Shown: positions 17,001 through 64,000 of the stretch, in pieces
Layout of the letters: each line of letters starts with the position of its first letter
How positions within the stretch are numbered: position 1 is the first letter of the stretch
Source of the DNA: Magallana gigas
Lineage: Eukaryota
Reading direction: 5' to 3'
Assembly: GCF_963853765.1 (NCBI RefSeq)
Contig: NC_088853.1
Span: 46,996,001 to 47,060,000, forward strand
DNA: 64,000 bases
Notes under the pieces: generated by a model
Told to the model about the DNA's origin: nothing
What the model saw: only the letters and a program-made list of their open reading frames with translations
Database searches by the model: none
Program-made: the position numbers and the translations under genes

Positions 17001-17181
17001 CATCATTAAAAAATAAAATTTTCTTTAAAAATGGCGGGGTTGTAGGTGTGGGAGATGTGAAACTGGTTATGGAGAGGTCTCGCTCTTAGTTATAACTTAT
17101 ATTTTTTTCATATAAGCGACAGTCGTAGATAATCGGGCTATGGTATACAATATAAGGAAAGGAAGAGCGATAAAGTGTATC

Positions 17182-19026: not shown

Positions 19027-19061
<35 letters not shown>

Positions 19062-22000
19062 TAGTCATCTGTTTGTAAATAAACGTTATAAAAGATTTTA
19101 TCTGGTAACTGTAGATTAAAATATTAATACATCTGTACACTTTAATAAACGACCATTAAAAGTAAAAAAGAATTCGTGAAACTATAATTATGAGATAAAC
19201 TTTGTTTCACATTCGTTAATTCAGACGAAATTCAGACGAAAATAATATTTAAATGTCATATTCATAAATCATATCTAACATAGGTGAACGATTGACGTAA
19301 CGATCGTTTACTATAGTTGTTATAATGATATGCTATTATTTACATCAATCAAACATAGTTTATGGCCATAAACTATAATTTACATACGTGAATGCCAAAC
19401 AAATGTTTACAGCAATTATATAGAGTATGGATACATGATTGTATAAAAGCTGTTAAATGTAATCTAATATGCTTTGATTTTTAATTGAAACTATTTTGGA
19501 ACGTATTCATAAGATAGAGCAATTATTTTCGCACAAAACGATTAGATCGTAAGCTAAACTTTAGGATTGTGAAATTTTTTCGCAAAATTGTTTGTCTCCC
19601 ACACAAACACTAGATTTTGTGTTAACTGTTAATTTCAAATGCAAAACTGCTTCCAACACATTTTGTGAATACGGACCATAAATGTTTATAAATTATATAT
19701 TTTAAACCGTATATTTTACTTAACATCTGCTAACAATATATATTTTTTTTCGAATTGGATCGTGAACTAACTACACGTTTAATTATGAGATAATGTTTTG
19801 GAGTCGTAAATGTTGTTTTACGCTTTTTGTTTAAGAACTTAAGTGATGTGTGAAATAAAGTAAATAGCATTCTCTGTGGTTTAATATAGATGTGCAGTGT
19901 ATATTTGGGCGGTAACTATTGTTCACCGCCCGAGAGTTTACAGTGGATAATACTAGTTGTCATATGTGAAACTATAAGGCTAGGTCCATTATGTGAATAT
20001 GACAATCATTTTTATTCAAAATATTTTGACAAATTGTAATAGTGACAGGCAATAGAGATGGACGTTTTAGACAGGCATTAGAGACGGACGTTATTGACAG
20101 GCATTAGAGACGGACGTTATTGACAGGCAATAGAGACGGACGTTATAGACATACAGTACAAACGGACGTTTTGTAAAGGCATTAGAGACGGACGTTATAG
20201 ACAGGCATTAGAGACAGACGTTATTGACAGGCAATAGAGACGGACGTTATAGACATACAGTACAAACGGACGTTTTGTAAAGGCATTAGAGACGGACGTT
20301 ATAGACAGGCATTAGAGACAGATGTTATAGACAGGCATTAGAGACGGACGATTTAGACAGGCAATAGAGACGGACGTTTTAGACATACAGTACAAACGGA
20401 CGTTTTGTAAAGGCATTAGAGACGGACGCTTTAGGCAGGCATTAGAGACGGACGTTATAGACAGGCATTAGAGACGGACGTTATAGACGGGCATTAGAGA
20501 CGGAAGTTATAGACGGGCATTAGAGACGGACGTTATAGACAGGCATTAGAGACGGACGTTATAGACAAGCATTAGAGACGGATGTTATAGACAGGCATTA
20601 GAGACGGACGTTATAGACAGGCATTAGAGACGGACGTTATAGACAGGCATTAGAGACGGACGTTATAGACAAGCATAAGAGACGGACGTTTTAGACAGGA
20701 ATTAGAGACGGACGTTATAGACAGGCATTAGAAACGGACGATATATACAGGCGATTCAGAAAAACATTAGAAACAGACGTTATAGATGTGTGTTACAGAC
20801 AGACTTGGCACACAGATACAGACACGTGCTAAAGACGAAAATTACAGGCAGACGGACGTTTTTAGACGGAAATTTCAGATTGGTGCTGCAGACAGACATT
20901 ACAGACCGGTACTTAAATTGATGTAAGCTAATGGTAGCTTCACATGGACGTTACAGATGGATGATATCAAAACAATCATTTAAGAAATTCGACTAAGGGT
21001 GATTTAACATATTTCACAAACTATTCTTAATTTAAAGCAGAGATATATGAGAATTATCGATTTCAAATTTGAGGGCAATACACCCCCTTAACGACGGGCT
21101 GAGACAGAGAAATATCAGCCCCGAGGGTGATACAGCCCTAGCTTCCAGTTGCTATCTCACCTAGTCCAAAAACACGTGTATCAGGGCTGATACACTACTA
21201 GGTATATGATATAGATGGATGATATAAAAATAATCATTTAAGAAATTCGACTAAGGGTGATTTAACATATTTTATTGAATATTTTTAAAGTGGATTAGAA
21301 TGGAGGAACAGCCTATACATGTCCTCTCCTCGTATATGGTCATAGTAATTAATGAGTATATATTTTATGACATTCCGATTGTACACATGTAATTGATTAA
21401 TATCAGAATACACCTTAAGTATGTTCTAGGTACATGTAGTTGTGTTGTTGAGCTTCATGTATATGTATTTTTTCAGAATTATGATTAAATAATCCCAAAT
21501 TTTTTAAACTATTGATATTGCTCAGAACTGTAATGCAATTCCAACATGTTTTAACAATTTTTAAGTCTTCTGTTAAAATTGAAAGCGTTTAGAAAAACAC
21601 ATCACTATCAAGCAGTGCACTGAATGCTGAGCTAACTGGGAGAGTTCATAATCAGTTTCATCTATCGAGTTCTACTTCCTGAGTACGCGGCTGACTTCCT
21701 TCCATGAATGTCTTTGTTTGTCGTGTCCTGTTCGCTTTCTCTTAGTCATCTGTCTGTAAATAAACGTTATAAAAGATTTTTTCTGGTAACTATAGATTAA
21801 AATATTAATACATCTGTACACTTTAATAAACGACCATTAAAAGTAAAAAAGAATTCGTGAAACTATAATTATGAGATAAACTTTGTTTCACATTCGTTAA
21901 TTCAGACGAAATTCAGACGAAAATAATATTTAAATGTCATATTCATAAATCATATCTAACATAGGTGAACGATTGACGTAACGATCGTTTACTATAGTTG

Positions 22001-22720
22001 TTATAATGATATGCTATTATTTACATCAATCAAACATAGTATATGGCCATAAACTATAATTTACATACGTGAATGCCAAACAAATGTTTACAGCAATTAT
22101 ATAGAGTATGGATACATGATTGTATAAAAGCTGTTAAATGTAATCTAATATGCTTTGATTTTTAATTGAAACTATTTTGGAACGTATTCATAAGATAGAG
22201 CAATTATTTTCGCACAAAACGATTAGATCGTAAGCTAAACTTTAGGATTGTGAAATTTTTTCGCAAAATTGTTTGTCTCCCACACAAACACTAGATTTTG
22301 TGTTAACTGTTAATTTCAAATGCAAAACTGCTTCCAACACATTTTGTGAATACGGACCATAAATGTTTATAAATTATATTTTTTAAACCGTATATTTTAC
22401 TTAACATCTGCTAACAATATATATTTTTTTTCGAATTGGATCGTGAACTAACTACACGTGTAATTATGAGATAATGTTTTGGAGTCGTAAATGTTGTTTT
22501 ACGCTTTTTGTTTAAGAACTTAAGTGATGTGTGAAATAAAGTAAATAGCATTCTCTGTGGTTTAATATAGATGTGCAGTGTATATTTGGGCGGTAACTAT
22601 TGTTCACCGCCCGAGAGTTTACAGTGGATAATACTAGTTGTCATATGTGAAACTATAAGGCTAGGTCCATTATGTGAATATGACAATCATTTTTATTCAA
22701 AATATTTTGACAAATTGTAA
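17391..22720 (+). repeat. Tandem segmental duplication of ~2.7 kb (17391..20039 and 20043..22720)
   Basis: Near-identical array variants and unique sequence at an offset of 2730 bp, falling to 2681 bp after a (CT)n length difference. Confidence 0.95.
20043..20752 (+). repeat. 26-bp satellite array, copy 2
   Basis: Same unit and same order of variant units as 17391..18022. Confidence 0.95.
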
Positions 22721-22871: not shown

Positions 22872-23319
22872 GTATATAGGTTTGTAAACATCTAATCCCG
22901 TATAGAGGTTTGTAAACATCTAATCCCGTATAGAGGTTTGTAAACATCTAATCCCGTATAGAGGTTTGTAAACATCTAATCCCGTATAGAGGTTTGTATA
23001 CATCTAATCCCGTATAGAGGTTTGTAAACATCTAATCCCGTATAGAGGTTTGTAAACATCTAATCCCGTATATAGGTTTGTATACATCTAATCCCGTATA
23101 GAGGTTTGTATACATCTAATCCCGTATAGAGGTTTGTAAACATCTAATCCCGTATAGAGGTTTGTAAACATCTAATCCCGTATATAGGTTTGTAAACATC
23201 TAATCCCGTATAGAGGTTTGTATACATCTAATCCCGTATAGAGGTTTGTAAACATCTAATCCCGTATAGAGGTTTGTTAACATCTAATCCCGTATTGAGG
23301 TTTGTAAACATCTAATCCC
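22872..23319 (+). repeat. 28-bp minisatellite, 16 copies
   Basis: GTATAGAGGTTTGTAAACATCTAATCCC x16 (448 bp), with few variants. Confidence 0.97.
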
Positions 23320-23716
23320 GTATCATACTATATGCGTGTTCTCCATTTATTACTGGTCTCTGAAGTTTATCTGAGCAGAAAAAACCCACCGGAAGCTCTA
23401 CGTCACCAGGAACTAAATTGTAGTCTCTACTTAAATTCGGACTTAACCGCATTACATTGAATCGTTTGCTTTCACTTCTACATTCTTTTTCAGGATCGGT
23501 CTCGCATTCGGCTCCTAAGAGTTTCTCTGCTTTGTAAATTACGTTCGGTATCCTGTTCGAATCAACATCCGGTATCCATTTCCATGGACACAAACAACTT
23601 CCGGTCAGTAGAGGACAACGGTTTGCTTCCTCGATAAGAACGTTAAAGGTGTTTGACATGGGGAAGGTGACAGTATGAGATCGCTGATTTGCTGAAACAA
23701 CAGGATTGCTGTCCAC
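23312..23716 (-). pseudogene. Possible LINE ORF1 N-terminal remnant
   Basis: 134-codon ORF containing FPMSNTFNVL, reminiscent of the SNRFxVL motif of CR1/L2 ORF1 linkers. No other support. Confidence 0.2.
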
Positions 23717-25034: not shown

Positions 25035-27799
25035 ATACACATCTATCAGTATTAAAGGAGTGATAATACACATCTATCAATATTATAGGAGTGATAATAC
25101 ACATCTATCAGCATTATAGGAGTGATAATACACATCTATCAATATTATAGGAGTGATAATACACATCTATCAGAATTATAGGAGTGATAATACACATCTA
25201 TCAGTATTATAGGAGTGAGATAATACACATCTATCAGTATTATAGGAGTGATAATACACATCTATCAGTATTATAGGGGTGATAATATACATCTATCAGA
25301 ATTATAGGAGTGATAATACACATCTATCAGTATTATAGGAGTGATAATACACATCTATCAGTATTATAGGAGTGATAATACACATCTATCAGTATCAGTA
25401 TTATAGGAGTGATAATACACATCTATCAGCATTAAAGGAGTGATAATACACATCTATCAGTATTATAGGAGTGATAATACACATCTATCAGTATTATAGG
25501 AGTGATAATACACATCTATCAGAATTATAGGAGTGATAATACACATCTATCAGTATCATAGGAACACATCTATCAGCATTATAGGAGTGATAATACACAT
25601 CTATCAATATTATAGGAGTGATAATACACATCTATCAGAATTATAGGAGTGATAATACACATCTATCAGCATTATAGGAGTGATAATACACATCTATCAG
25701 TATTATAGGAGTGATAATACACATCTATCAGTATTATAGGAGTGATAATACACATCTATCAGAATTATAGGAGTGATAATACACATCTATCAGTATCATA
25801 GGAACACATCTATCAGTATTATAGGAGTGATAATACACATCTATCAATATTATAGGAGTGATAATACACATCTATCAGAATTATAGGAGTGATAATACAC
25901 ATCTATCAGTATTATAGGAGTGAGATAATACACATCTATCAGTATTATAGGAGTGATAATACACATCTATCAGTATTATAGGAGTGATAATATACATCTA
26001 TCAGAATTATAGGAGTGATAATACACATCTATCAGTATTATAGGAGTGATAATACACATCTATCAGCATTATAGGAGTGATAATACACATCTATCAATAT
26101 TATAGGAGTGATAATACACATCTATCAATATTATAGGAGTGATAATACACATCTATCAGAATTATAGGAGTGATAATACACATCTATCAGTATTATAGGA
26201 GTGATAATACACATCTATCAGTATTATAGGAGTGATAATACACATCTATCAGTATTATAGGAGTGATAATACACATCTATCAATATTATAGGAGTGATAA
26301 TACACATCTATCAGCATTATAGGAGTGATAATACACATCTATCAGTATCATAGGAGTGATAATGCACATCTATCAGTATCATAGGAACACATCTATCAGC
26401 ATTATAGGAGTGATAATACACATCTATCAGCATTATAGGAGTGATAATACACATATATCAGTATTATAGGAGTGAGATAATATACATCTATCAGTATTAT
26501 AGGAGTGATAATACACATCTATCAGTATTATAGGGGTGATAATATACATCTATCAGTATTATAGGAGTGTTAATACACATCTATCAATATTATAGGAGTG
26601 ATAATACACATCTATCAGTATTATAGGAGTGATAATACACATCTATCAGCATTATAGGAGTGATAATACACATCTATCAGTATCATAGGAGTGATAATAC
26701 ACATCTATCAGTATCATAGGAGTGATAATACACATCTATCAGTATTATAGGAGTGATAATACACATCTATCAGTATTATAGGAGTGATAATACACATCTA
26801 TCAGTATTATAGGAGTGATAATACACATCTATCAGTATTATAGGAGTGATAATACACATCTATCAGTATCAGTATTATAGGAGTGATAATACACATCTAT
26901 CAATATTATAGGAGTGATAATACACATCTATCAGCATTATAGGAGTGATAATACACATCTATCAGCATTATAGGAGTGATAATACACATCTATCAGTATC
27001 ATAGGAGTGATAATACACATCTATCAGTATCATAGGAGTGATAATACACATCTATCAGTATTATAGGAGTGATAATACACATCTATCAGTATTATAGGAG
27101 TGATAATACACATCTATCAATATTATAGGAGTGATAATACACATCTATCAGTATTATAGGAGTGATAATACACATCTATCAGTATTATAGGAGTGATAAT
27201 ACACATCTATCAGTATTATAGGAGTGATAATACACATCTATCAGTATTATAGGAGTGTTAATACACATCTATCAGTATTATAGGAGTGATAATACACATC
27301 TATCAGTATTATAGGAGTGATAATACACATCTATCAATATTATAGGAGTGATAATACACATCTATCAGTATTATAGGAGTGATAATACACATCTATCAGT
27401 ATTATAGGAGTGATAATACACATCTATCAGTATTATAGGAGTGATAATACACATCTATCAGTATTATAGGAGTGTTAATACACATCTATCAGTATCAATA
27501 TTATAGGAGTGATAATACACATCTATCAGTATTATAGGAGTGATAATACACATCTATCAATATTATAGGAGTGATAATACACATCTATCAGTATTATAGG
27601 AGTGATAATACACATCTATCAGTATTATAGGAGTGATAATACACATCTATCAGTATCAGTATTATAGGAGTGATAATACACATCTATCAATATTATAGGA
27701 GTGATAATACACATCTATCAGTATTATAGGAGTGATAATACACATCTATCAGTATTATAGGAGTGATAATACACATCTATCAGTATTATAGGAGTGATA
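25035..27799 (+). repeat. 31-bp satellite, ~89 units (2.77 kb)
   Basis: Unit GTATTATAGGAGTGATAATACACATCTATCA, with recurrent indel variants. Confidence 0.97.
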
Positions 27800-28415
27800 C
27801 TACAACACAACAGTTCTAGTATATAAAAAAAGACAAAATTAAAAGACATAACAAATATATTTTAAACTTCTCAATGCTACAGCCCGGTAAAATGCAAGGA
27901 TACATGAATACCCTCTAGTTGTGCCTTTAAGTTAGACGACTGTACTGCTCGCATAACGAACACACACAATCATCTTATTACACACATACTACCATTATGT
28001 CAAAGATGATTAGAGAAATCTTGTATAGATGCCTTTATTCCTCAAATTGTTTCTTTTTTCAGTTTAGAAACATCCGGAGAGAACCTGTGTTCTTGATGAA
28101 AATGTTGATATAAGTAATCGTGTTTAGTATGTGTATGTAGGCAGTTAGTACAATTTTACGATTTTTATTGATATCTAGGAGTTTTAAACGTTTTTGGGTT
28201 CATAGTTTTGGGAGTTGCATGTTTGTATTCCGCTGACGGCTATTTAGAGAGCAGAGGCAAAGCCAACAACAGCAGGATACAAGATAATTTCAAATGGCGT
28301 TAAAGCTAGAGTATAACCATGGAAAAATACCAAATGTATAGAGATATATTCTTTCTCTTATTTACAGAAAGAAATTTTAAAGACAATTTGACTGAAAACT
28401 TGCAGTGATAATTTT

Positions 28416-33250: not shown

Positions 33251-34270
33251 ATCTACTACTTATCTATTCATTTATAAAATGTACCTCTGACTTTTGAACT
33301 GTATATAATGATTGACCTCATGTACCATTTCATGGTTTTAGCGAATAAACTGAATTGAAAAAATTGGATCTGATGGTTGATATATTGACCATCCAACCTC
33401 CTTAAAGAAACAGAACAGCTGAAAACATATGTGTGAATAACTTCAGATTTACCTATTGTATCGTTAGGAAACAAGAAACAACGTTGATTGTAATAATTGA
33501 AATTCATAAAAATCCCTTTCACATACTTAGTTAACGTAATTATGAGCTTCCGGAAATTTAAGGATCGTACAAACCGGAATAATCTTATATCGTTTATTTT
33601 TACCACGTGGACTTTGATTGACAGTAATTGACACGTGCTGAAAGCTATAAGATCTTCGTCTGACTACGGTCATCTTGGTATACGAGGTTAAAGGGACTCT
33701 CTAGACGGAACTCATCGTCACTTACTCGATAATTTTTAAATGGTTTACCAATTTCGGTTCATTTTAACATGAACAGACATAAATATGTCAAATAACCCCT
33801 TAAAGGCCGGGGCCTCATTTACACAAATGAATTTAGGTTGTAGCAACTCCTATGATAAACACGCAAAGTACATGCTTCCAAAATAATAATTGTGGTTTTT
33901 TAAAAACTTTGAACAATTATTACCTAAGAGAAGTAGAAAAACCATATTTTTATCAACAAACCTGTCCAGGAGAATCTTCGCGAACCCTGCATGTGTTTTG
34001 TTTGCAGTACATAATTATGCATGCGTAATAGTATAATAGAAGGCTGAACCCCGTAACACGTTGCGATGTAAATATAGGTTAAACGTAAGTATTAATTTTA
34101 ATGAAATAATTAGATTTATTTCACGGAGAACTTTGTAATTTTCGAAAAGTTTATAAATTCATGAGTTGAGTAGTACAAAAATACCGAACCCGATCGGAGA
34201 ATTTTTTTCAAGTCGGTTTTTTGATAAGATGTGCCGTACTGTCTCTTTAAACTCACTTGGCCCATATAAA

Positions 34271-35536
34271 GAACACTGATGTAGAATAGCTTATATATAG
34301 AACATTGATGTGACATACCTTATATATACAACATTGATGCATCATACCTTACATATAGAACATTGATGTAGCATACCTTATAAATAGAACACTGACGTAG
34401 CACACCTTATGTATGGATCACTGATGTAGCATACCTTATATATAGATCACTGTGATGTAGCAAACTTTATATATAGAACATTGATGTAGCATACCGTAAA
34501 TATAGAAAACTGATATAGCATACCTTATAAATAGAACACTGACGTAGCATACCTTATATATAGAACAGTGATATAGCTTACCTTAAAAATAGAACACTGA
34601 CGTAGCATACCTTATGTATAGAACATTGATGCATCATACCTTATATATAGATCTCTGATGTAGCATACCTTATATACAGGACACTGACGTAGCATACCTT
34701 AAAGATAGAACAATAATGTAGCATACCTTATATATAGAACATTGGTGTAGCATACCTTACATATAGAACATTGATGCATCATACCTTATATATAGAACAT
34801 TGATATAGCATACCTTATAAATAGAACACTGACGTAGCATACCTTGTGTATAGATCTCTGACGTAGCATACCTTATGTATAGAACATTGATGTAGCATAC
34901 CTTATATTAGAACATTGATGTAGCATACCTTATATATAGAACCTTGATGTAGCATACCTTATATATAGATCACTGACGTAGCATACCTTATGTATAGAAC
35001 ATTGATGTAGCATACCTTATGTATAGAACATTGATGTAGCATACCTTATATTAGAACATTGATGTAGCATACCTTATGTATAGAACATTGATGTAGCATA
35101 CCTTATATTAGAACATTGATGTAGCATACCTTATGTATAGATCATTGATGTAGCATACCTTATATACAGAACATTGATGTAGCATACCTTATATATAGAA
35201 CATTGATGTAGCATACCTTATATATAGAACATTGATGTAGCATACCTTATATATAGAACATTGATGTAGCATACCTTATATACAGAACATTGATGTAGCA
35301 TACCTTATATACAGAACATTGATGTAGCATACCTTATGTATAGAACATTGATGTAGCATACCTTATGTATAGAACATTGATGTAGCATACCTTATGTATA
35401 GAACATTGATGTAGCATACCTTATATATAGAACATTGATGTAGCATACCTTATATATAGAACATTGATGTAGCATACCTTATATATAGAACATTGATGTA
35501 GCATACCTTATATACAGAACATTGATGTAGCATACC
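34271..35536 (+). repeat. 29-bp satellite, ~44 units
   Basis: Unit GAACATTGATGTAGCATACCTTATATATA, degenerate on the left and homogeneous on the right. Confidence 0.95.
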
Positions 35537-36242: not shown

Positions 36243-36391
36243 NNNNNNNNNNNNNNNNNNNNNNNNNNNNNNNNNNNNNNNNNNNNNNNNNNNNNNNNNN
36301 NNNNNNNNNNNNNNNNNNNNNNNNNNNNNNNNNNNNNNNNNNNNNNNNNNNNNNNNNNNNNNNNNNNNNNNNNNNNNNNNNNNNNNNNNNN
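36243..36391. other. Assembly gap (N run)
   Basis: 149 N. Confidence 1.
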
Positions 36392-50336: not shown

Positions 50337-53300
50337 ATGTGGCGTGTCTTTTGTTGTAGCTGCAGTGTGTGTATTTGTGGTTGTCGTGTCAAGACTCTCT
50401 ACAGCACAGCTCACTACCAGCTCCACCGGTAAGAACAATCACCTAACAGGACAACAAGATTTGCGAACGCTTGCTACTGCGTACAAGGATAACCGCACTA
50501 TAATCGTGTTCTCCTCCAACTAAAATATAAATATTGTCAAGTCGAATTTAATATCGGTACTAAGCTTTATTATTAGGTATCGAAAGCCTTTTTCAGGCAC
50601 TTAAGATTTACCTTATAGTCCTCGATCTTCACTCGTCGACTTCGACAAGATTCACTCACAGCGTTCTGTCTCTGCTGTATATACCCTATTGTCATGTAAC
50701 AAAAGTCTTAGAGAACAGTACAGAGTTCAAAACAGGAAGTCATAAAACAAAAATTTAGGAAGCCGGAAGGGATATTTGATTTTCATTTACTACTTCCGCT
50801 TCAACTCAAAGAATAATTCCTTTTTCTTTAATTCGTTTAACCAGTGACGGACTTGATATTTTCCGCTCATTTCAGGGTGTGAAGAAGGAACATTCTTGTT
50901 GAATGGCAGATGTGAGAGCTGTAGCACAAACTGTAATCGAGGCGCCTGTGACGTCACAGACGGGCGGTGTTCGGACGGGTGTATACAAGGATTCTACGGC
51001 CAGACGTGTCAGCATCCCTGTCCAGACAACTGTTTATATGACCAGTGTAGTATTGACACGGGGTTTTGTAATTTTGGGTGTACACATGGTTTCTATGGCG
51101 ACATGTGTGACCTAACCTGTAATGAACATTGCAATGAAAAGAAATGCAAAAGAGACTCCGGCTACTGCAGCGCCGGTTGTGTTCCAGGATACTTCGGAGA
51201 CAAGTGTGACTCGGCGTGCAACAGTCACTGTATCCAGACGTGTGAACGAACTTCCGGTGTCTGCGACGCATGCGTGGATGGTCATTACGGGGCAAACTGT
51301 ACGGATACGTGTAGCACCGGATGTGGAACTCTCAAGTGTCGACAGGATAACGGGGAATGCTGGGACGGCTGTAAGACGGGATGGACTGGGCCTCAGTGCG
51401 CGGGTTTGTGTTGTGTTTCGCTTATGTTCGGTTTGCATATGTACCTTATTAATAATCAATTAATGATTTGATTTTTATAAATTTTTATACATGCATGTTA
51501 TACATGTATATGTAGGTATAAAAATTATGCAAGTCATTTTCAGGTCAATTGGACCGAACCCCTTTTTTAACGTCACAATTCTATTACTAGTATTCTTTTT
51601 ACTTGTTATCGGTACTATTTCAAAGGAATCCGATATTGGTATTGGGTTTGAAACTAACTACATGTACATATGTAATATCGAGTGAATCGTTTACAGCTAA
51701 ATCATGTTCACTGATCGATGTAGCCAAATTAGACTATAAGACCCTTAATGTTATACTATTACTATGTCCAAAGATATCCGCGATTTACATTTTGCTTAAT
51801 TACTCGATATTTATAAATATCATAAGGTTCCAACAATGTTTATTCAAAAGCATGAAAAAATTCAAAGATTTTTCCTTTGAAACGCTCAACACACAACTAA
51901 ATATAAAGGAGTCTACATGGATGTTGCATTGCAACAGACATATATGTACCCGGGCGATAACGTTGAAAAATTGTGCGAGGTATTCGGACTGGCTTCCGGA
52001 TGGAGAAAAGATGTGACAGTCATCATTCCCTATTATAAATCTCCTTAAAAATCTGCTTTCGTTCCTGTAAAATTTTCCAAGTGAAAAATTACAATGTATC
52101 TATGAAAATATCTTGGATATTTTCCCTTTCATCGATTTTAATTGCACTTCTTTCACAGGATATGTGTATTTTTATTTAAGGTATCCGATCCATAATAGCC
52201 CCAGATTTAATGAATCTGGATGCATAACAGATAAATGTATATGTGGGCTTAATACTCACTATACTTTGACATAATTTTCGGATACCTTAAATTTTATTTA
52301 ATTGTGCTGCATAAATATCTTGAGACAGACTATAAACAGGGAATGACTAACAACAGTTTATTGTCTAATAATGTCAATGGGGGATTTAATCTATATAATA
52401 GAATTTTTCTCGCATTTACAAGAAAATCGATTAAGATTTGCAACAATATTAATAGCAAGCGCATTTATATACACACACAAAAGCAAGAGTCACACTTTAC
52501 TGACATATCGTCCAATTTTAAGCTTATTTTGCATGCATGTACAGTAAGTATAAGTAGTGAAGAAATAAAATATAAAGGTCATTTTGAACTATATAAATAG
52601 AATAAACAGAAAAATAAACAATTAAAACAAATTATGCAGATATTGCATATTGTCAAACCTTTAAGTTGGAAAATGTGATACATCCACAAACAGGGACCCG
52701 GGGCCCGGATACAACGTATGTAATTAGACTCAGATATATAATCAAATTAAAAAAAGACTTGAACCAGGAAATTATTTTTTAAAAATGTCAGATAACAACA
52801 CAGTACAAATGAAAAATGATACTGTATTTACTGTTTACACATTTGACCAAATTAAACACAAATTACATTTTACAGACTGATCAATTCTATCCAAAAGTAA
52901 GGAACGATTTTAGGGGGAAGCAAGTCTATGTATNNNNNNNNNNNNNNNNNNNNNNNNNNNNNNNNNNNNNNNNNNNNNNNNNNNNNNNNNNNNNNNNNNN
53001 NNNNNNNNNNNNNNNNNNNNNNNNNNNNNNNNNNNNNNNNNNNNNNNNNNNNNNNNNNNNNNNNNNNNNNNNNNAAATATCGCTAAGATGACAATGATGC
53101 ATAGTACATGTATGTGTAATTCTTGCTGCGCTCGCCACAAAGGTAACACCGTACAACATATCATTGTTACATTCTCAGCTATTTTTCTCTTCTTATGATT
53201 CTGTAGGTATTTACTAGATTTTACATAATAACAGACAATTTTGGAATAACACATTTTGAGGCGAAATAACCAGTCAAATTGCCCAATTATTGCGAAAACT

Positions 53301-56083: not shown

Positions 56084-57093
56084 GTACGTGTGCGCGTTGA
56101 ATCATCCAGAAATTTTTGAAGTGTAATAAATGGACGACAAACCTAATTTGCGCATGCAGTTGCTATATTTTCGATTTAAGGTAGTACGAAACACCCCTGA
56201 AATTATTTATTTGAAATATTTTCTGAAATACACAAAATAATGACTTAATATAATGTAAAAATTAATTTCAGTCCATTATCTTAAGAAAAAAATAAATCAT
56301 ACCCATCAATTACTCACGGCCAAATAAATTTAGGTTACAACGTATTTCAATAATTTTGAAACATACATTTGGATGGCACCGTGTTCATAACTATGATTTT
56401 TGTGCAATTTAGCCTTATCCCATTTAAAAATACTTGTGTTCTTTCTGTCGAACAAATTTCAAGGTCATATGAACAGGTCAAAGGCCAAATATGATGACGT
56501 CATCTAGGATTTTTATCAATTTATACCTCCGTCAAACATACTTAAACCTTGATTAATCTAAAACCAATGGTTAAATTTTCTTTATTTTTATATATTTTAA
56601 TTACAGGGTCATGACAATCATACTGTTAAATTTTATTCAAATTTGAATGATACATTTTCTTTTTAGCTACCGTTAAGTGCTGCAAATTTTCGTCTTAAAT
56701 GAGTATTCACAAGCACTAGGTTTACATTATATTGCATGAGAAATTATCTTAAGTTACCAGCAAACTAAGGCTCGTCGCACAGACTGCAGACTGCCAGCTT
56801 GTGGAATGTGTGACGTCACAGGAATGTTGAGTATTTTTAGCACAGACTTGGTCAGTCTGATACGTCACAGATACCCTATGGTATTTTTAATTCAGGAATG
56901 CAAAATATTTCATAGACTGATTCTACTAGGTTTTGCAGACATTTGCATCATGAGTATTTTTAGCCCAGACTTTAAGGAATGTACAATATTTTCATAGCCA
57001 ATCTAAAACATGTGAGAGAAAGGAATGCAGTAAAGACTATAAGTACTTGCATGCCACACTTTTTCTATATCATTTTTACTTGAAATTTTAACG

Positions 57094-57193
57094 ATGGAAG
57101 ACGCTCACCGAGAGATCCTGAAAAGAAATTATTCAACGTTAGTTTGGGAAATGTCTCCTGAATTAGTTGTTGAAGAGCTTTATAGGAAAAGAC
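57094..57193 (+). pseudogene. 5' fragment of a CARD (death-fold) domain exon, cut by the Polinton terminus
   Basis: ATG at 57094 gives MEDAHREILKRNYSTLVWEMSPELVVEELYRKR, which has the pattern of CARD helices 1-3. It then runs into AGTTCTG at 57194. Confidence 0.55.
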
Positions 57194-57349
57194 AGTTCTG
57201 CGCCACCCATCCGTCTTATAAGAAAATAGAAGGCATCCCTCACTTTCCCTCACATTGAATTATATAGAAGATATCCCTCACTATATAACGAGTATTGAGG
57301 GATGACTGATAAGTAGGTCACTGGTCATTTCAATCACCTGTGGAATGTT
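57194..57349 (+). repeat. Polinton terminal repeat, copy A
   Basis: AGTTCTGCGCCACCCATCCGTCTTATAAGAAAATAGAAGG..; homologous to 57992..58152 (direct) and 63570..63739 (inverted); carries a 14-bp deletion relative to the latter. Confidence 0.75.
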
Positions 57350-57991
57350 TGGATAAACCCTGGAAAACATGAGAAAAAGAGTAAATTTGGAATTGGTGCA
57401 CACTAAACGGAGATTGCGTAAGGTGTGTGCCAAACCAAACTTTCAATTCTTTAAGATATATAATGAAGATTTGGTGGCGGTCAATCTTAGAAAATCAAAC
57501 ATTGTCCTTAAATCAACCCATTTATGCCGGCTTCTGTATACTCGACCTCGCTAAGCTGCTCATGTTTCAGTTGCATTATGACTTTATGAAATCCACTTAT
57601 GGAGATACAGCTAGTCTTCTTTGTACCGACACAGATAGCCTTTGTTATGAAATTCAAAAAGACGATATTTATTAGGGCATGTATAAACATCTCTACCTCT
57701 TTGATACCAGTAATTTTAACAAGCACCACTTTCTGTATTACAAAACGAACTGTAAAGTTCTTGGAAAAATGAAAGATGAATGTGGGGGAACACCGATACA
57801 AGAATTTATTGGACTAAGACCTAAAATGTACAGTTTGTTATACGATGGCCAAGAAAAGAAAACTGCAAAGGGAGTGAAAAAGTCGGTGATTGAAAAAGAT
57901 TTGAAACACGAATCTTATAAGCAAGCTCTCTTTGATCATAGTTCTATGAAGCATTCAATGAATATGATTAGAAGTGTCAACCACCAATTGT
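57350..57991 (+). pseudogene. Protein-primed family B DNA polymerase fragment (Polinton), left copy
   Basis: TLENMRKRVN, QPIYAGFCILDLAK, CTDTDS, EFIGLRPKMYS, KTAKGVKK, IRSVNHQL. One frameshift and one TAG. Confidence 0.93.
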
Positions 57992-58331
57992 CACCCCATC
58001 CCTCTTATAAGAAAATAGAAGGCATCCCTCACCATTCCTCACATTGTATTATATAGAAGATATCCCTCACTATATAACGAGTATTGAGAGATGACTGATA
58101 AGTAGGTCACTGGTCATTTAAATCACATGTGCAATCGATCGGGTGGAATGTTGACTGGGTCACTGCAAACTGCGCGCTGACCACCGAGTTTATTGCCCCT
58201 TTAAACTGAGGAATGTGAAGTCTGCATTGTATTTAAAGAATATTTGTTACCTTAATAACATGATAAAGGAAATTCCAATAAATTTAAAATAGATAAAAAG
58301 CAATATGTTCACAATGCAGTTGCATTATTCA

Positions 58332-59364
58332 ATGAACTGGAAGGAACACCTAAAACATATATATTTTTTAATGTGAAAAATCCCATTAGCTATGCAGGTC
58401 GTACGAAAATTTATCATTATTTAAAAAAGGAAGCAAAATATTCAGTAGGTTTGAGTGCTATCAAACAATGGCTGCAAGGCATTGATGCCTACAGTTTTCA
58501 ACGTCCACAGAGATATATTTTAAGACGAACAGAGTCATTTCCCAGGGTTTAGACTTCCTTTGAGATGGAGATTTAGCCGACGTTTCAACACTTTCAGAAG
58601 ACATTGATATAATATAATATATAAAGTATTTATTCATCGCCATCGACGTATTCTCAAGATATGCTTGGGTTAAACCTCTGAAAAACAAACTCCACGGTAG
58701 TGTCATAGATGCTTTGAATGGCATTTTTTAAAACGGGACGCAAGCCTAAAGAACTTCAAACAGACAAAGGGAGTGAATTAAAAAATCAAGGGGTCGAAGA
58801 TTTTTCAGAAGACAAGGAGTTGATCATTACGTTACACATAACGTCACTCATGCCAATTATGCCGAGCGGTTCATTCGAAAGTCATGATGTATCGATATTT
58901 CACCCACAATAGAACATACAGATTTACAGACTGTTAGAAATTATAACAGTCGGCCACACAGATCGTTAAATGGCTTATCACCTAGAGACATAAATAAAAT
59001 CAATGAAGCGGTGACTTGAAAGAAATTATATGTAGATGTCTTGAAACCCAGTGTTTTCAAAAAGAAAGCGTACTAACCACGTAAGCGTTTCAAATTTAAA
59101 ATGGGAGACTATGTAAGAATATCAAGCACCAAGCACATTTTCCTGCGGGACAAAATTACGGATTACGGCAACGATCCCATCGAGGGAACGTTTTATGAAT
59201 CTGAGCTTCAAAGAGTCAACAAAACCAGAGACGACTTGTGGAAGATTGAGAAAATCTTGAAACGGCGCAGATGAAGAGGAAAGGTAGAAGTCTTCGTAAA
59301 ATGACAAGGGTATCCAACGAAGTTTAATTCCTGGGTACATGAGAGACAGCTGCAAGATATATAA
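58332..59364 (+). pseudogene. Polinton retroviral-like integrase (rve plus C-terminal chromodomain), disrupted
   Basis: MNWKEHLKHIYF..AIKQWLQGIDAYS..IDVFSRYAWVKPLKNK..GRKPKELQTDKGSE..AERFIR..FKMGDYVRIS..GTFYESELQRV..IEKILKRR..GYPTKFNSWV. Many stops and frameshifts. Confidence 0.92.
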
Positions 59365-59407
59365 AGAGTCTATTTAAAAACTTGCCATCATTTTCAACCC
59401 TGCAGTT

Positions 59408-60328
59408 ATGAAGCCAACATCATGCTCTATCTGCCAGAGAGAATTTTCACGCCCTGATAATCTGAGGAGACATTTACGAACTGCTCATGGGAGCAGTGAA
59501 CCATATCCTCAAATGTCTGAACCGTATCCTCAAATCACAGAACCGTATCCTCAAATCACAGAACCGTATTCTCATCAGGATTTCACTCCTCCTCCTCCTT
59601 CTCCTCCTCCTCCTCCTCCTGATTTCACTCCTCCTTCTCAGTACCTCACTTCTTTAAAAGAGAATATGTTATCAGAAAGCATGGAGGATAAGTTTCAGTT
59701 CGTGCATCCCTTCACCATGATCGTTGCGGGACCAACTATGTCGGGAAAATCTACATGGATCAACTACTTTTTAATAAACAGCTCATAATCCCCGCACCTG
59801 AAAGAATTTTGTGGATTTATAAGAATTATGTGGATTTATAAGCAATGGCAACCCCTTTATGATGAGTTTAAGTACTGGATTTCAGGTATAAAATTCATTC
59901 AAGGGATAACGGAAGACATCAAAACAGACAAGTTTATTAACTCTCGCGAAAGAACACTGCTGGTTATTGATGACATGATGAAGGATGCCACTCAGGACAA
60001 GGAAATTTGTGAACTATTTACGGAGGGTGCTCACCATCGCAACCTAAGTGTGATCTGTATTATGCAAAATCTGTTTAACAAAGGAAAGGAAAACCGAACA
60101 ATGAGTTTAAACAGCCAGTACATAGTTATCTTTAAAAATCCAAGAGATCGACAACAAATTGCAACCCTTGCACGACAAATGTATCCTGGAAATTCAAAGA
60201 AGCTGTTGGATGCTTATGAAAATGCAGTGTCTTTTCCCTACGGTTCGTTGATTTTGGATTTAAAACAAACAACCCCAGAATCGATGAGACAACTCAAATC
60301 ATCACTTGACAGCAGATCGACAAAGTAA
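59408..60328 (+). pseudogene. C2H2 zinc finger + Pro-rich linker + FtsK/A32-like packaging ATPase, disrupted
   Basis: CSICQREFSRPDNLRRHLRTAH; (EPYPQxx) repeats; Walker A GPTMSGKS; Walker B LLVIDD; HHRNLS; FKNPRD. A frameshift near 59770 and a 19-bp duplication (59802..59839). Confidence 0.9.
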
Positions 60329-60394
60329 TTGGACGTCTGTAAAACCCGCTCCCCACAGATCAAATCAGTATCAAATCAGTATCCGATTGAAGAG

Positions 60395-61072
60395 ATGGCG
60401 TACCACCAAAGACCGGGTACTCAGAAGTATTATTATCCTCCCTCCTCTAATTCTTGGGCTACACCACTAGATACGAGAAATGTACAGACAAGGGAAATCG
60501 ATGAGAAATATCCATCCTGTTCAGAATGTGGTACCATGTTTGCCAGCACGTATGATTTACAACGACATACCAAAAATGGTTGTCCAATGGAAGAAGAAGA
60601 AGATGATGCAAAGTCTGAGGTTAGTGAGGAGGATGATGACAGTGGATTTACACTCCTAGTCAATCAAGTACTGGAAGAAAATCAATCTCAGTTCGACAGA
60701 AAATTGGATCAACTTATGGATGAAAATTCCAAACTCACTCGGCATGAAGCTCGAGAGGAAGTGAGAGATATGATGCTACCGAAAGACAGAGCTCTGCTTT
60801 TCAGAAAATACAAACGTATTCTCATGATTACATCTAACCTAAACAAGAGCAAACTGCATCGTGCTATCCGAGAAGAAATAATAGCTGTAATGGAAAATAC
60901 CGATATAGATGTGGAAACTGCTATTTCTCGCGTTCTTAATAAGCATAAACAAGACTTTGATGAATTACTTGAAATTGAAGATATTACTGATGATGAAGAA
61001 TCTGATGAAGAATCTGGTGAAGATAAAGAGTCCGATGAAGAGTCAGGTGACGAGGAGCAATTAGAAGACTGA
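60395..61072 (+). CDS. Polinton-borne protein: C2HC/C2H2-like zinc finger, helical region, acidic tail (225 aa), uninterrupted
   Basis: ATG at 60395 within ORF 60329..61072; CSECGTMFASTYDLQRHTKNGC; D/E-rich C-terminus. Confidence 0.7.
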   Translation: MAYHQRPGTQKYYYPPSSNSWATPLDTRNVQTREIDEKYPSCSECGTMFASTYDLQRHTKNGCPMEEEEDDAKSEVSEEDDDSGFTLLVNQVLEENQSQFDRKLDQLMDENSKLTRHEAREEVRDMMLPKDRALLFRKYKRILMITSNLNKSKLHRAIREEIIAVMENTDIDVETAISRVLNKHKQDFDELLEIEDITDDEESDEESGEDKESDEESGDEEQLED

Positions 61073-61305
61073 ATATAAGTGGCATCCTCAATAGTTCTAA
61101 TGGGGAGGAATAAGAACTCAATGTCAAGTTCCAATTTATTATTGATATCAACAAATATTGTACACATACAAATTGTAAACATTATTTCAATTATGCATAT
61201 ATGGAATAAAAAAAAGAAGAAAAAAAAACCATATATATATATACACTGTCGTTATTTTTTTTCAATGTAAACCCATCTATACAATTTCAGAGGTATCAAA
61301 TGGCT

Positions 61306-63569
61306 CTATTTTCTAATTTTTTAATGTCCATGAGTATCCGTGTGTATACCTGTATCAAGTACATAACGCTTGTCATCATATAGACTTGAGTTGTTTTACG
61401 TATTGACACAGAATACAATTGGTGGTTGACACTTCTTCTTTCTCTTTTTTTTTTAATTCACACATTCTGCAGACATTCAATGCATGATTAAGTTGCTTTA
61501 AGTATACCGGTAATAATTCAGAAGTACAAAATTTTATTTGAGAGAGAGAGAGAGGGGAGGGAGAGAGAGAGATAGAGAAGGAAAATTCAAGTAAAAATTG
61601 GATTCCAGATGTTTCAATGAGTATCAAAAATCTCATTTTCACCTTTTTTGTAAGAAATAAATTTCTGTGTTTCTTAGAAGAGCTTTAAAGACGACATTGC
61701 ATAAGAAACACTCAACTGTTTCTCAGTACACCTTGCTGTGTAAATAAAGTACTTTAACCAAAGAAAAATGATATTAAGGATATCTTTGCTTTTACCAAGG
61801 ATGCCTAGAATGAAAGTTTTCTTGGTAAATGTAACCTTAAAATTGATTTTTTCTTCTAAAGAATCACAATCCCACAATATATGTTCTATAGTTTCCTCTT
61901 CTCTGTGACAAAAGGTACACATTTTAGAGTTTACTTTTTTAATTTTGAATAAAAAAGGGTTTGTTGCTAAAATGTTGTTGATTATTCTGTATTGGAACCA
62001 CTGAAGTTTACATTTTTTTGTTATTACAAAAGGTAGTTTATTGATTAATTTCCATTCCATGTCCTCTATATCTAATAATTCATTCCACCTTCTTTTACCT
62101 GTTATCACAGATATTATTGTTTAAAATATCATAAAAGAACTTTGACTTTTAACATTTCATAACTTTATATATGTTTTCTCTGATAAGCGGGTTTGCTAAT
62201 TTTCTTAAAGTTTGGTTTTCACCCAATTTTCTGATGTATGTCTGCCACCTTGATTAACTGCAGATGTTATGTTTGTATAAAAAATCTTTACCCGCTGTCT
62301 AATAGTGGGACCAAAGTTAAAACAATCTAAAGTTTGCTTTATAAAATTCCAAGATCAGGTATCAAAAGCCTTTTCAAAGTCGATAAGCAATCAAAGACCG
62401 GGAATTTCTTAATCTTCGGTATATTGCATTCTGTCAAATAATAACCTTGTGTTTTCTCCAATATATCTATAAGACATAAATCCAGTTTGATCTGGATTTA
62501 TAAGTTTATGTAAATATTTTTTTAATCTAACAGCAATACACCTAGATGCAATTTTGTACACAGTATCTAATAGAGTTATAGGACGCCAGTTCTTAATATA
62601 GTGTCTAGCTTTGTCACCTTTAGGTAGCAAAGTAATTACACCATGTCTTTGTGTGACTCATAATATATTATTTTTATATCTATAATTTATAGATCTAACA
62701 ACAAAAACACCAATGTATTTCCAAAAAACCTTAAAAAATTCTGAAGAAAAACCATTCGATCCAGGTAATTAGCTTTCATACTAGAAAGTGTTTTTGATGC
62801 CTCGCTAAAAGTAAATTCACCCTCTTAAGAATCTGATTCCGTTTCGGACAGTTTAGGAATGTCAGCATATATTAATTCATTATTTAAACCAAAGTTGACA
62901 TTATCTAACTTGTGTTCATATAATTTTGTATAAAAGATTTTAGTTTTAGTGGTTGACACTTCTTATCATATTCAGTGATTGCTTCATAGAACTATGATCA
63001 AAGAGAGCTTGCTTATAAGATTCGTGTTTCAAATCTTTTTCAATCACCGACTTTTTCACTCCCTTTGCAGTTTTCTTTTCTTGGCCATCGTATAACAAAC
63101 TGTACATTTTAGGTCTTAGTCCAATAAATTCTTGTATCGGTGTTCCCCCACATTCATCTTTCATTTTTCCAAGAACTTTACAGTTCGTTTTGGAATACAG
63201 AAAGTGGTGTTTGTTAAAATTACTGGAGATGTTTATACATGTCCTAATAAATATCGTCTATTTGAATTTCATAACAAAGGCTATCTGTGTCGGTACAAAG
63301 AAGACTAGCTGTATCTCCATAAGTGGATTTCATAAACTCATAATGCAACTGAAACATGAGCAGCTTAGCGAGGTCGAGTATACCGAAGCCGGCATAAATG
63401 GGTTGATTTAAGGACAATGTTTGATTTTCTAAGATTGACCGCCACCAAATCTTCATTATATATCTTAAAGAATTGAAAGTTTGGTTTGGCACACACCTTA
63501 CGCAATCTCCGTTTAGTGTGCACCAATTCCAAATTTACTCTTTTTCTCATGTTTTCCAGGGTTTATCCA
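61306..63569 (-). pseudogene. Polinton polB C-terminal remnant, right copy, split by a Tx1 LINE
   Basis: 63569..62949 is the inverted near-identical copy of 57350..57984. After the LINE, 61437..61306 resumes RSVNHQLYS..YDDKRYVLDTGIHTDTHGH, the polB C-terminus. Confidence 0.92.
61438..62948 (-). mobile_element. 5'-truncated, internally deleted Tx1/L1-clade LINE with 16-bp TSD
   Basis: PGSNGFSSEFFKVFW, KNWRPITLL, DQTGF, LIDFEKAFD, then a jump to zf-RVT (CTFCHREEETIEHILWDC) and an A-rich tail. TSD GTGGTTGACACTTCTT at 61422..61437 and 62949..62964. Confidence 0.92.
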
Positions 63570-63739
63570 AACATTCCACCCGATCGATTGCACAGGTGAT
63601 TGAAATGACCAGTGACCTACTTATCAGTCATCCCTCAATACTCGTTATATAGTGAGGGATATCTTCTATATAATTCAATGTGAGGAATAGTGAGGGATGC
63701 CTTCTATTTTCTTATAAGACGGATGGGTGGCGCAGAACT
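63570..63739 (-). repeat. Polinton terminal repeat, copy C (170 bp)
   Basis: Ends ..GGGTGGCGCAGAACT, the inverted counterpart of copies A and B. Confidence 0.78.
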
Positions 63740-63839
63740 GTCTTTTCCTATAAAGCTCTTCAACAACTAATTCAGGAGACATTTCCCAAACTAACGTTGA
63801 ATAATTTCTTTTCAGGATCTCTCGGTGAGCGTCTTCCAT
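63740..63839 (-). pseudogene. Second, inverted copy of the CARD-like exon fragment
   Basis: Identical to 57094..57193 on the minus strand. Homology with the left flank continues to the window end (64000 pairs with 56932). Confidence 0.55.
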
Positions 63840-64000
63840 CGTTAAAATTTCAAGTAAAAATGATATAGAAAAAGTGTGGCATGCAAGTACTTATAGTCTT
63901 TACCGCATTCCTTTCTCTCACATGTTTTAGATTGGCTATGAAAATATTGTACATTCCTTAAAGTCTGAGCTAAAAATACTCATGATGCAAATGTCTGCAA

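What the first reader, a model, noticed from the sequence alone, without database searches (positions are those of the whole stretch)
56932..64000. Polinton locus forming a giant palindrome: both outer termini abut the same host flank in inverted orientation
Seen: 56932..57991 and 64000..62949 (plus 7 nt beyond the LINE) are inverted near-identical arms. Each arm reads host flank - AGTTCTG terminal repeat - dead polB fragment. A third terminal-repeat copy (57992..58152, missing its first ~10 nt) begins a deleted Polinton body. Both arms share the same polB frameshift and TAG but differ by small indels (14-bp deletions at ~57340 and ~63225), so the duplication postdates inactivation. Established: Polintons have 5'-AG..CT-3' TIRs and make ~6-bp TSDs, so the two flanks should be the two different halves of the target. 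Inference: this is a fold-back or alternative-transposition product, or a new composite element whose >1-kb TIRs include host DNA. A flip between two haplotypes at the TIR during assembly is a real alternative.
Basis: partly seen in the sequence, partly recalled or inferred. Interest (0 to 1): 0.75.

Follow-up and report, generated by a model that had tools for sequence, protein, structure and literature searches.

The report
Inverted duplication at dead Polinton end
A decayed, heavily deleted Polinton (virus-like transposon) sits inside a CARD-domain exon, and a later inverted duplication copied its right end plus the adjoining exon piece onto its worn left end, most likely through ordinary break repair and not through a new kind of mobile element.

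Summary
Two inverted arms, 56933-57991 and 64000-62949 plus 61421-61415, differ at 13 of 1038 sites (1.25%) and by two 14-nt indels. Each reads cellular CARD-exon piece, ~170-nt terminal repeat, polB remnant. A third repeat copy (57992-58152) lacks its outer ~10 nt.

The anatomy differs from the title. There is one deleted Polinton (57992-63739), and only its right end touches the CARD flank. On the right, polB runs on across a LINE (exact 15-nt target duplication) to its natural end. The left arm stops short and is fused to the worn left terminus, so it is the extra copy.

Both arms share the large polB deletion, one frameshift and one stop. The element's own two terminal repeats differ by 5.0%. 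So the order was insertion, decay, duplication, then LINE.

The single-copy spacer is 3,423 bp, typical of fold-back inverted duplications. "Giant" is unproven, because the arm is cut off by the window's end. The second half of the CARD exon is nowhere in the 64 kb. Integrase-made joining is disfavoured because the terminus is not intact. An assembly flip through the repeats cannot produce this junction, but an artefact is not excluded. There is no evidence for a composite mobile element. Interest is modest.

The parts
56933..57991 (+). Left arm: the extra, inverted copy of the right end plus flank. Its outer limit is set only by the window's end.
   Evidence: 13 substitutions in 1038 aligned bases against the right arm, and two 14-nt indels.
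56933..57193 (+). Cellular flank inside the left arm: the upstream region and first ~31-33 codons (from 57094) of a CARD-domain exon, reading towards the element.
   Evidence: P0248 (95 aa, Pfam CARD PF00619) is 81% identical over 31 residues. Its contig L001 aligns at 88% from ~57000 to ~57187 and then stops.
57194..57349 (+). Terminal-repeat copy in the left arm. It carries one private 14-nt deletion.
   Evidence: 2 of 146 sites differ from the right-arm copy.
57350..57991 (+). polB remnant, left-arm copy. It is cut short at its C-terminal side and shares one frame change and one stop with the right copy.
57992..58152 (+). Left terminal repeat of the element proper, lacking the outer ~10 nt. 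The novel junction lies at 57991/57992.
   Evidence: 8 of 160 sites differ from the right terminal repeat.
58259..59350 (+). Integrase-like gene remnant, with several stops and frame changes. No intact relative was available for an exact count.
   Evidence: Sub-threshold rve and rve_3 hits lie in the right order on two window pieces and on relative P0252. Relatives were found. L001 has similarity with summed E 2.6e-19.
59378..60325 (+). Zinc-finger plus FtsK/A32-like packaging ATPase reading, with one in-frame stop.
   Evidence: zf-C2H2 at E 5e-7. FtsK_SpoIIIE at E 0.04 and Pox_A32 at E 3.5e-4, both below Pfam's cut-off.
60329..61072 (+). 247-codon ORF of unknown role, with acidic short repeats and a weak zinc-finger match.
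61299..63569 (-). polB remnant of the element proper, given as one part and interrupted by the LINE. It equals only the last ~22% of intact relatives. Damage: one large N-terminal deletion, three frame changes (one of them from a private 14-nt deletion), at least two in-frame stops, and one nested insertion.
   Evidence: (5 of 17 full-length relatives match DNA_pol_B_2, best E 1.3e-24).
61437..62948 (-). 5'-truncated LINE fragment (reverse transcriptase and zf-RVT) with an A-rich 3' tail. It is present in the right arm only.
   Evidence: RVT_1 at E 1e-6 and zf-RVT at E 3.4e-7. Sequence read.
61422..61436 (-). LINE target-site duplication, inner copy. The outer copy is 62949-62963. The unoccupied single copy in the left arm is 57970-57984.
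   Evidence: three exact matches in the window, 0.01 expected.
61415..61421 (-). The last 7 nt of right-arm homology, on the far side of the LINE.
63570..63739 (-). Right terminal repeat of the element, ~170 nt, with its outer end at 63739.
63740..64000 (-). Cellular flank of the right arm: the same CARD exon piece (ATG at 63839), running off the window.

Best explanation
One Polinton inserted into the first coding exon of a CARD-domain gene. It decayed: about 78% of polB was lost, the capsid and protease genes are absent, and the integrase is riddled with breaks.

Later a DNA break or a stalled fork at, or within about 10 nt of, the element's left terminus was repaired by a fold-back type inverted duplication. 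The exposed end was extended on the opposite strand, starting 3.4 kb further in. This copied, in inverted orientation, part of the polB remnant, the right terminal repeat, the adjoining CARD exon piece and an unknown length beyond.

The 3,423 bp between the two priming points (57992-61414) stayed single-copy as the spacer. The original left flank, holding the rest of the CARD exon, was lost or displaced. Afterwards a LINE entered the right arm, and each arm picked up a private 14-nt deletion and a few substitutions.

Shown: the anatomy, the order of events, and the cellular nature of the flank. Inferred: the break-repair mechanism, and that the break was linked to the element's end. A complete head-to-head duplication followed by an asymmetric central deletion would leave the same product, and I count it as a variant of this explanation.
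For: - The right arm is continuous with the natural C-terminal end of polB across the LINE, and the left arm is cut short. Intact relatives bridge the two right-hand pieces.
- The left arm is fused to a terminal repeat that lacks its outer ~10 nt.
- Both arms share the large deletion, one frame change and one stop.
- The arms differ by 1.25%, against 5.0% between the element's own two terminal repeats (Fisher p 0.004).
- The LINE, with an exact 15-nt duplication, is in one arm, and the empty site is in the other.
- The flank is a CARD exon piece whose homology to an uninterrupted paralogue stops within ~10 nt of the repeat's start.
- The second half of the exon is absent from the window.
- The 3,423-bp spacer lies in the range of sequenced human fold-back duplications, which is 766-70,466 bp with a median of 3,428 bp (PMC3907307).
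- Polinton remnants are known to cause inversions and duplications of host exons (PMC11414722).
Against: - No clear inverted microhomology can be shown at 57991/57992, because the ancestral outer bases of the left terminus are unknown.
- A fold-back product is a dicentric or acentric chromosome unless a second junction exists, and that junction is not visible because the window ends inside the arm.
- Nothing in the window proves that both arms lie on one molecule.
- A 1.25% difference is also of the order expected between alleles in many marine invertebrates.
Confidence: 0.6

Rival explanations
1. Assembly artefact. The left arm is the other haplotype's copy of the right end, lacking the polymorphic LINE, and was joined in inverted orientation by a chimeric read or a graph error. 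In reality each chromosome has one arm and an ordinary left flank.
For: - The arm difference of 1.25% plus small indels and a present/absent LINE looks like allelic variation.
- An independent short-read assembly holds a right-arm-like ORF at 96% identity (P0002), which shows variation of that size exists.
- The exact junction-spanning ORF is not in the public protein collection.
- The window has two N runs, so this is a scaffolded assembly.
Against: - The junction 57991/57992 joins mid-polB to position ~10 of a terminal repeat with no shared sequence that could mislead an overlap or graph assembler.
- A flip through the terminal repeats would give flank, repeat, body without the 640-nt polB piece and without a second repeat copy.
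- There are no Ns at the junction.
- Absence from the protein collection is weak evidence, since none of the four arm ORFs of the window is in it.
Confidence: 0.13
2. Integrase-made aberrant (alternative or sister-chromatid) transposition. The element's left end was transferred by a Polinton integrase into the polB remnant of the sister copy, which gave the inverted join.
For: - One breakpoint falls within ~10 nt of an element terminus. That is unlikely for a random break (about 10 in several thousand positions) and suggests the end itself was processed.
- Alternative transposition of Ac/Ds gives inverted duplications of this general kind (10.1101/2020.01.07.897926).
Against: - The terminal ~10 nt of the repeat are missing or unrecognisable at the junction, whereas strand transfer keeps the terminus.
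- No short duplication marks the junction.
- The element's own integrase is broken, so a related active copy would have been needed.
- With arms only 1.25% diverged, later erosion of ~10 nt in one spot is not expected.
Confidence: 0.12
3. A new composite mobile element whose terminal inverted repeats, longer than 1 kb, include captured cellular DNA (the CARD exon piece) and which moves as a unit.
For: - Polinton terminal repeats can reach 1.5 kb (PMC10748475).
- A second contig (L001) also shows a CARD exon near a decayed integrase-like stretch, in the same order as in the left arm.
Against: - There is no second copy of the arms or the junction in 64 kb.
- L001 has an uninterrupted CARD exon and no polB or terminal-repeat similarity, so it is not a copy of this unit.
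- The arms' inner ends are asymmetric, one continuous with polB and one truncated, as expected of a one-off duplication.
- All element genes here are dead.
Confidence: 0.05

Closest known systems
Polinton / Maverick virus-like transposons
   Same: - A protein-primed family B polymerase remnant whose full-length relatives match Pfam DNA_pol_B_2.
- ~170-nt terminal inverted repeats.
- Integrase-like and A32/FtsK-like ATPase readings in the body.
- Insertion into a cellular gene.
   Different: - Only ~4.2 kb of element sequence remains, against the usual 13-25 kb (PMC10748475).
- No capsid or protease genes were found, and every gene is broken.
- One terminus is worn.
- The target duplication cannot be read because the left flank has been replaced.
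Fold-back inverted duplications with a single-copy spacer (human constitutional cases, yeast and cancer foldback inversions; PMC3907307, PMC10622511)
   Same: - Inverted arms separated by a single-copy spacer of a few kb (3,423 bp here; the human median is 3,428 bp).
- Sequence beyond the break is lost.
- One junction shows little or no homology.
   Different: - Here one breakpoint coincides with a transposon terminus.
- The event is old and apparently fixed, not a fresh pathological rearrangement.
- The outer end of the arms and any microhomology could not be examined.
Maize Mu killer and inverted duplications made by Ac/Ds alternative transposition (PMC3440606; 10.1101/2020.01.07.897926)
   Same: A partial inverted duplication of a transposon gene together with its terminal repeat, lying next to a cellular gene that reads into it. 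That architecture can give a hairpin transcript.
   Different: - Those are plant cut-and-paste transposons with shown small RNAs and silencing.
- Here no transcript or small RNA has been examined.
- The host is an animal, probably a cnidarian, judged only from the named relatives.
Polinton-driven reshuffling of the C. elegans eri-6/7 locus (PMC11414722)
   Same: Polinton remnants and their terminal repeats lie at the breakpoints of inversions and duplications of host exons.
   Different: There the rearrangements are ascribed to recombination between several Polinton copies. Here a single element is involved, and the junction lies between unrelated sequences.

Membership tests
Polinton / Maverick | [quoted passage not shown] | tested here: met
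   The window pieces themselves give no Pfam or PDB hit. The longest piece finds 4717 relatives. Full-length ones of 1100-1340 aa match it near their C-termini. Five of 17 match DNA_pol_B_2, best E 1.3e-24. Only the last ~22% of the gene survives here.
Polinton / Maverick | Encodes a retrovirus-like (rve) integrase | tested here: inconclusive
   Only sub-threshold hits, though they lie in the right order: rve E 0.028, rve_3 E 0.03, and relative P0252 rve E 0.14. No PDB sequence hits. The chromodomain-like tail I read by eye has no support from any tool.
Polinton / Maverick | Terminal inverted repeats of 100-1500 bp | tested here: met
   57992-58152 against 63570-63739 shows 8 differences in 160 sites, and the left copy lacks the outer ~10 nt. 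The size range is from PMC10748475.
Polinton / Maverick | 5-8 bp target-site duplication | not testable with these tools
   The original left flank has been replaced by the left arm, and the second half of the CARD exon is not in the window.
Polinton / Maverick | Virion module: packaging ATPase, protease, major and minor capsid proteins | tested here: not met
   Only an A32/FtsK-like ATPase reading below Pfam's cut-off. No capsid or protease match in any piece, and there is no room for them in 4.2 kb. This fits a deletion derivative and not a complete member.
Fold-back inverted duplication | Inverted arms around a single-copy spacer of roughly 1-70 kb | tested here: met
   Arms of at least 1.06 kb. 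The spacer 57992-61414 is 3,423 bp and is unique in the window. The size range is from PMC3907307.
Fold-back inverted duplication | Short inverted microhomology at the spacer/arm junction | tested here: inconclusive
   Read strictly, no bases are shared at 57991/57992. The ancestral outer bases of the left terminus are unknown, so the test cannot be completed.
Fold-back inverted duplication | Loss of the sequence beyond the break | tested here: met
   Residues 32-95 of the CARD exon, taken from paralogue P0248, have no counterpart in 64 kb. The only hit (E 0.45) is chance-level.
Fold-back inverted duplication | A second, outer junction or chromosome end closing the arms | not testable with these tools
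   The right arm runs off the window at 64000.
Integrase-mediated alternative transposition product | Intact element terminus joined to the new target | tested here: not met
   The junction copy of the terminal repeat starts at about position 10 of the repeat.
Composite transposon with long repeats that include captured DNA | Several copies sharing the same outer ends, each with its own target duplication | not tested
No further copy in the window.
Mu killer-type hairpin locus | Inverted duplication of a transposon end and part of its gene, with a cellular gene reading into it | tested here: met
   In both arms the CARD exon start and its upstream region point into the terminal repeat and polB remnant. 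The architecture of Mu killer is from PMC3440606.
Mu killer-type hairpin locus | A hairpin transcript and small RNAs that act on related elements | not testable with these tools
   No expression data are available.

The most novel reading that the evidence does not exclude
The locus works like maize Mu killer, but in an animal and against a virus-like element. The CARD gene's upstream region points inward in both arms. It would drive transcription through a ~1-kb inverted repeat made of Polinton terminal repeat and polB sequence, giving double-stranded RNA and small RNAs that silence related Polintons. That could also explain why the palindrome has been kept.
Probability: 0.08. Interest if true: 0.6.

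Novelty: new member of a known kind. Interest (0 to 1): 0.33.

Why it matters
As it stands, this is a well-resolved example of how a dead virus-like transposon can seed a structural rearrangement of a cellular gene. Here the gene is an innate-immunity type CARD exon, and one breakpoint lies at the element's terminus. It adds an animal, non-nematode case to the few described Polinton-associated rearrangements.

It also serves as a caution for annotation. Such a locus can be mistaken for an element with very long terminal repeats that carry host DNA. It would matter more if the arms prove to be large, making it a true genomic palindrome, or if the locus produces small RNAs against Polintons.

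Tried and rejected
- **Direct naming of the polB pieces.** Pfam and PDB sequence searches found nothing. A PDB search with a profile of 17 full-length relatives found only zinc fingers. The name came only from Pfam hits on some full-length relatives.
- **Naming the integrase and ATPase pieces.** PDB sequence searches found nothing. The word-based protein search gave only unnamed fragments.
- **Looking for the second half of the CARD exon in the window.** One hit at 52265-52179 had the expected strand and register. It is chance-level (E 0.45, scattered identity, followed by a stop, next to dispersed repeats) and I rejected it.
- **Exact look-up of four arm ORFs in the public protein collection.** None is present, so it gave no independent support for or against the junction.
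- **Simple nested insertion of a second Polinton into polB.** Rejected. The polB part beyond the insertion point lies in the opposite orientation and belongs to the right copy.
- **Two independent insertions into two inverted CARD paralogues.** Rejected. The arms share the same insertion point, the same deletion and the same breaks.
- **An assembler flip through the terminal repeats.** Rejected as a cause of this particular junction, for the reasons given in the report.
Full report
**1. Observation**

The window is AT-rich (about 33% G+C), rich in tandem arrays, and has two N runs, which I left untouched.

- The two inverted arms are real. Ungapped blocks are 98-99% complementary, and one BLAST alignment covers 56933-57987 against 64000-62946.
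- In the pairwise alignment there are 13 substitutions in 1038 aligned bases (1.25%) and two 14-nt indels, one private to each arm.
- Substitutions are spread over all three segments: flank 2 of 261, terminal repeat 2 of 156, polB remnant 9 of 621.
- The arm sequence is found nowhere else in the window.
- The outer edge at 56933 is only the mirror image of the window's end.

**2. Inner ends of the arms and the LINE**

Read on the - strand, the right arm reaches 62949 and is interrupted there by a 5'-truncated LINE (61437-62948). The LINE has RVT_1 and zf-RVT matches and an A-rich tail. It is flanked by an exact 15-nt duplication at 62949-62963 and 61422-61436. The left arm holds the single unoccupied copy at 57970-57984. 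That makes three exact matches in the window where 0.01 is expected. The true inner ends are therefore 57991 and 61415.

**3. What the arms contain**

- **Flank.** An ORF that starts at 57094 (63839 on the other arm) runs into the terminal repeat. Its first 31 residues are 81% identical to P0248, a 95-residue protein with a Pfam CARD domain.
- **Where host homology stops.** The contig of P0248 (L001, a Logan assembly of run ERR13986109) aligns with both arms at 88%, from about 95 nt upstream of the ATG to codon 31. It then stops within about 10 nt of the repeat's first base. So the flank is a piece of a cellular-type CARD exon, and the element boundary at 57194/63739 is right to within about 10 nt.
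- **Terminal repeat.** It is about 170 nt long.
- **polB.** The pieces give no Pfam or PDB match on their own. The word-based protein search found only unnamed fragments, and the few with names come from anthozoan cnidarians. The exhaustive search found 4717 relatives. Full-length proteins of 1100-1340 residues match the piece near their C-termini. Five of 17 of them match Pfam DNA_pol_B_2 (best E 1.3e-24), and all 17 have an endonuclease-VII-like motif. The polB label therefore stands, through relatives.

**4. One element, not two outer termini on the same flank**

Intact short relatives run without interruption from the right arm, across the LINE site, on to the - strand stretch that ends near 61300. 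So the right arm is continuous with the natural C-terminal end of polB.

The left arm stops at 57991 and is joined to a third copy of the terminal repeat (57992-58152) that lacks the outer ~10 nt. From that repeat inwards lie:
- an integrase-like remnant (58259-59350), supported only by sub-threshold rve hits that lie in the right order;
- a zinc-finger plus A32/FtsK-like ATPase reading (59378-60325), below Pfam's cut-off;
- a 247-codon ORF of unknown role.

So 57992-63739 is a single, internally deleted Polinton with about 4.2 kb of its own sequence, against the usual 13-25 kb (PMC10748475). The left arm is an inverted extra copy of its right end plus flank.

**5. State of the genes (counts only)**

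- **polB, right copy:** one large N-terminal deletion that leaves about the last 22% of the protein, three frame changes (one caused by a private 14-nt deletion), at least two in-frame stops, and one nested LINE.
- **polB, left copy:** the same large deletion, one frame change and one stop, both shared with the right copy, plus truncation of the last ~45 residues.
- **ATPase reading:** one in-frame stop.
- **Integrase-like region:** several stops and frame changes. I did not count them, for want of an intact relative.
- **Capsid and protease genes:** not found.

**6. Order of events**

The shared polB damage shows that the duplication came after decay. The element's own left and right terminal repeats differ at 8 of 160 sites (5.0%), four times the arm-to-arm value (Fisher p 0.004). 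The LINE and the two 14-nt indels are private to one arm each, so they came after the duplication. The order was insertion, decay, inverted duplication, then LINE and small changes.

**7. Mechanism**

The product is an inverted copy of the segment from a point inside polB outwards, attached to the other end of a 3,423-bp single-copy spacer. That is what fold-back priming after a break, or a template switch at a stalled fork, produces. In 21 sequenced human cases the spacer was 766-70,466 bp with a median of 3,428 bp, and the junctions had 2-8 nt of inverted microhomology or none (PMC3907307).

- Here one breakpoint lies within ~10 nt of the element's terminus. This suggests that the break was linked to the end of the element. 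That is an inference.
- Microhomology cannot be judged, because the ancestral outer bases of the left repeat are gone.
- The second half of the CARD exon is absent from all 64 kb. This fits loss of the sequence beyond the break.
- A full head-to-head duplication followed by an asymmetric central deletion would leave the same product.

**8. Rivals**

- **Integrase-made joining** is disfavoured, because the terminus is not intact at the junction.
- **A composite mobile element** has no support. There are no other copies in the window, and the arms' inner ends are asymmetric.
- **An assembly artefact** cannot be excluded. The arm differences are of allelic size, and P0002, from an independent short-read assembly, is a 72-residue ORF 96% identical to the right-arm ORF. 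It ends at the same residue, where in the window the LINE junction makes the stop. However, a flip through the terminal repeats cannot create a polB-to-repeat junction, and there is no shared sequence at 57991/57992 to mislead an assembler.
- **The exact look-up** of the junction-spanning ORFs found none in the public protein collection, which decides nothing.

**9. Comparison with what is known**

The element is a deletion derivative of a Polinton/Maverick. The rearrangement belongs to the known class of fold-back inverted duplications. Polinton remnants at breakpoints of host-exon rearrangements are known from C. elegans eri-6/7 (PMC11414722).

The architecture also recalls maize Mu killer: a transposon end and part of its gene in inverted duplicate, with a cellular gene reading in (PMC3440606). 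Whether it makes small RNAs is untested. The word 'giant' in the finding's title is unproven.

Noticed in passing
window 61415-61436 and 57970-57991: The LINE's insertion site lies only 7 nt from the inner breakpoint of the inverted duplication, and the left arm keeps the empty site. Either this is coincidence (under about 1% for a random site in the element) or the spot is fragile and was used twice.
   Followed up: partly
L001:1-2225 (Logan ERR13986109): The contig with the uninterrupted CARD paralogue reads CARD exon (190-477), then a PC4-domain ORF (573-1055, E 6e-13), then a decayed integrase-like stretch (about 1891-2218, summed E 2.6e-19 to the window's integrase region). This is the same order and orientation as the CARD piece and integrase in the window's left arm, but without polB or terminal-repeat similarity. 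It could mean cargo, a target preference, or coincidence.
   Followed up: partly
window 57094-57186 against L001:190-282: The 8 coding differences between the two CARD copies fall 3, 3 and 2 on codon positions 1, 2 and 3, and the upstream region is about as similar as the coding part. The CARD copies show no sign of purifying selection and may belong to a neutrally evolving repeated family.
   Followed up: partly
P0002 (72 aa, Logan) against window 62949-63164 (-): An independent short-read assembly holds an ORF 96% identical to the right-arm ORF, with the same length and the same last residue, where the window's stop is made by the LINE junction. So a very similar polB/LINE junction exists in another data set. 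Its contig was not fetched because of the bar.
   Followed up: partly
relatives P0109-P0247 (alignment A3): All 17 full-length polB relatives carry an endonuclease-VII-like motif in mid-protein (best E 8.6e-10), and some have N-terminal C2H2 zinc fingers. Only 5 of 17 reach Pfam DNA_pol_B_2.
   Followed up: no
window 17173-22720: A roughly 2.7-kb tandem segmental duplication: 17314-19018 matches 20044-21742 at 94%, and 19051-20039 matches 21732-22720 at 99%. Each copy starts with an array of 26-nt units.
   Followed up: no
window 25035-27804; 34262-35536; 22872-23323; 1297-1584; 6793-7637; 43056-43800: Several satellite-like tandem arrays, with periods of about 31, 29, 28 and 36 nt and two more diverged ones. 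The largest is 2.8 kb.
   Followed up: no
window 23315-23716 (-): An ORF with a weak interleukin-17 domain match (E 9.6e-5, just below Pfam's cut-off).
   Followed up: no
window 36243-36391 and 52934-53074: Two N runs of 149 and 141 bases, left as they are. The second lies 3.9 kb to the left of the visible arm.
   Followed up: no
window 44337-44601, 51910-52176 and 2806-2934: A dispersed repeat family at about 78-80% identity, next to the chance-level CARD hit at 52179-52265.
   Followed up: no
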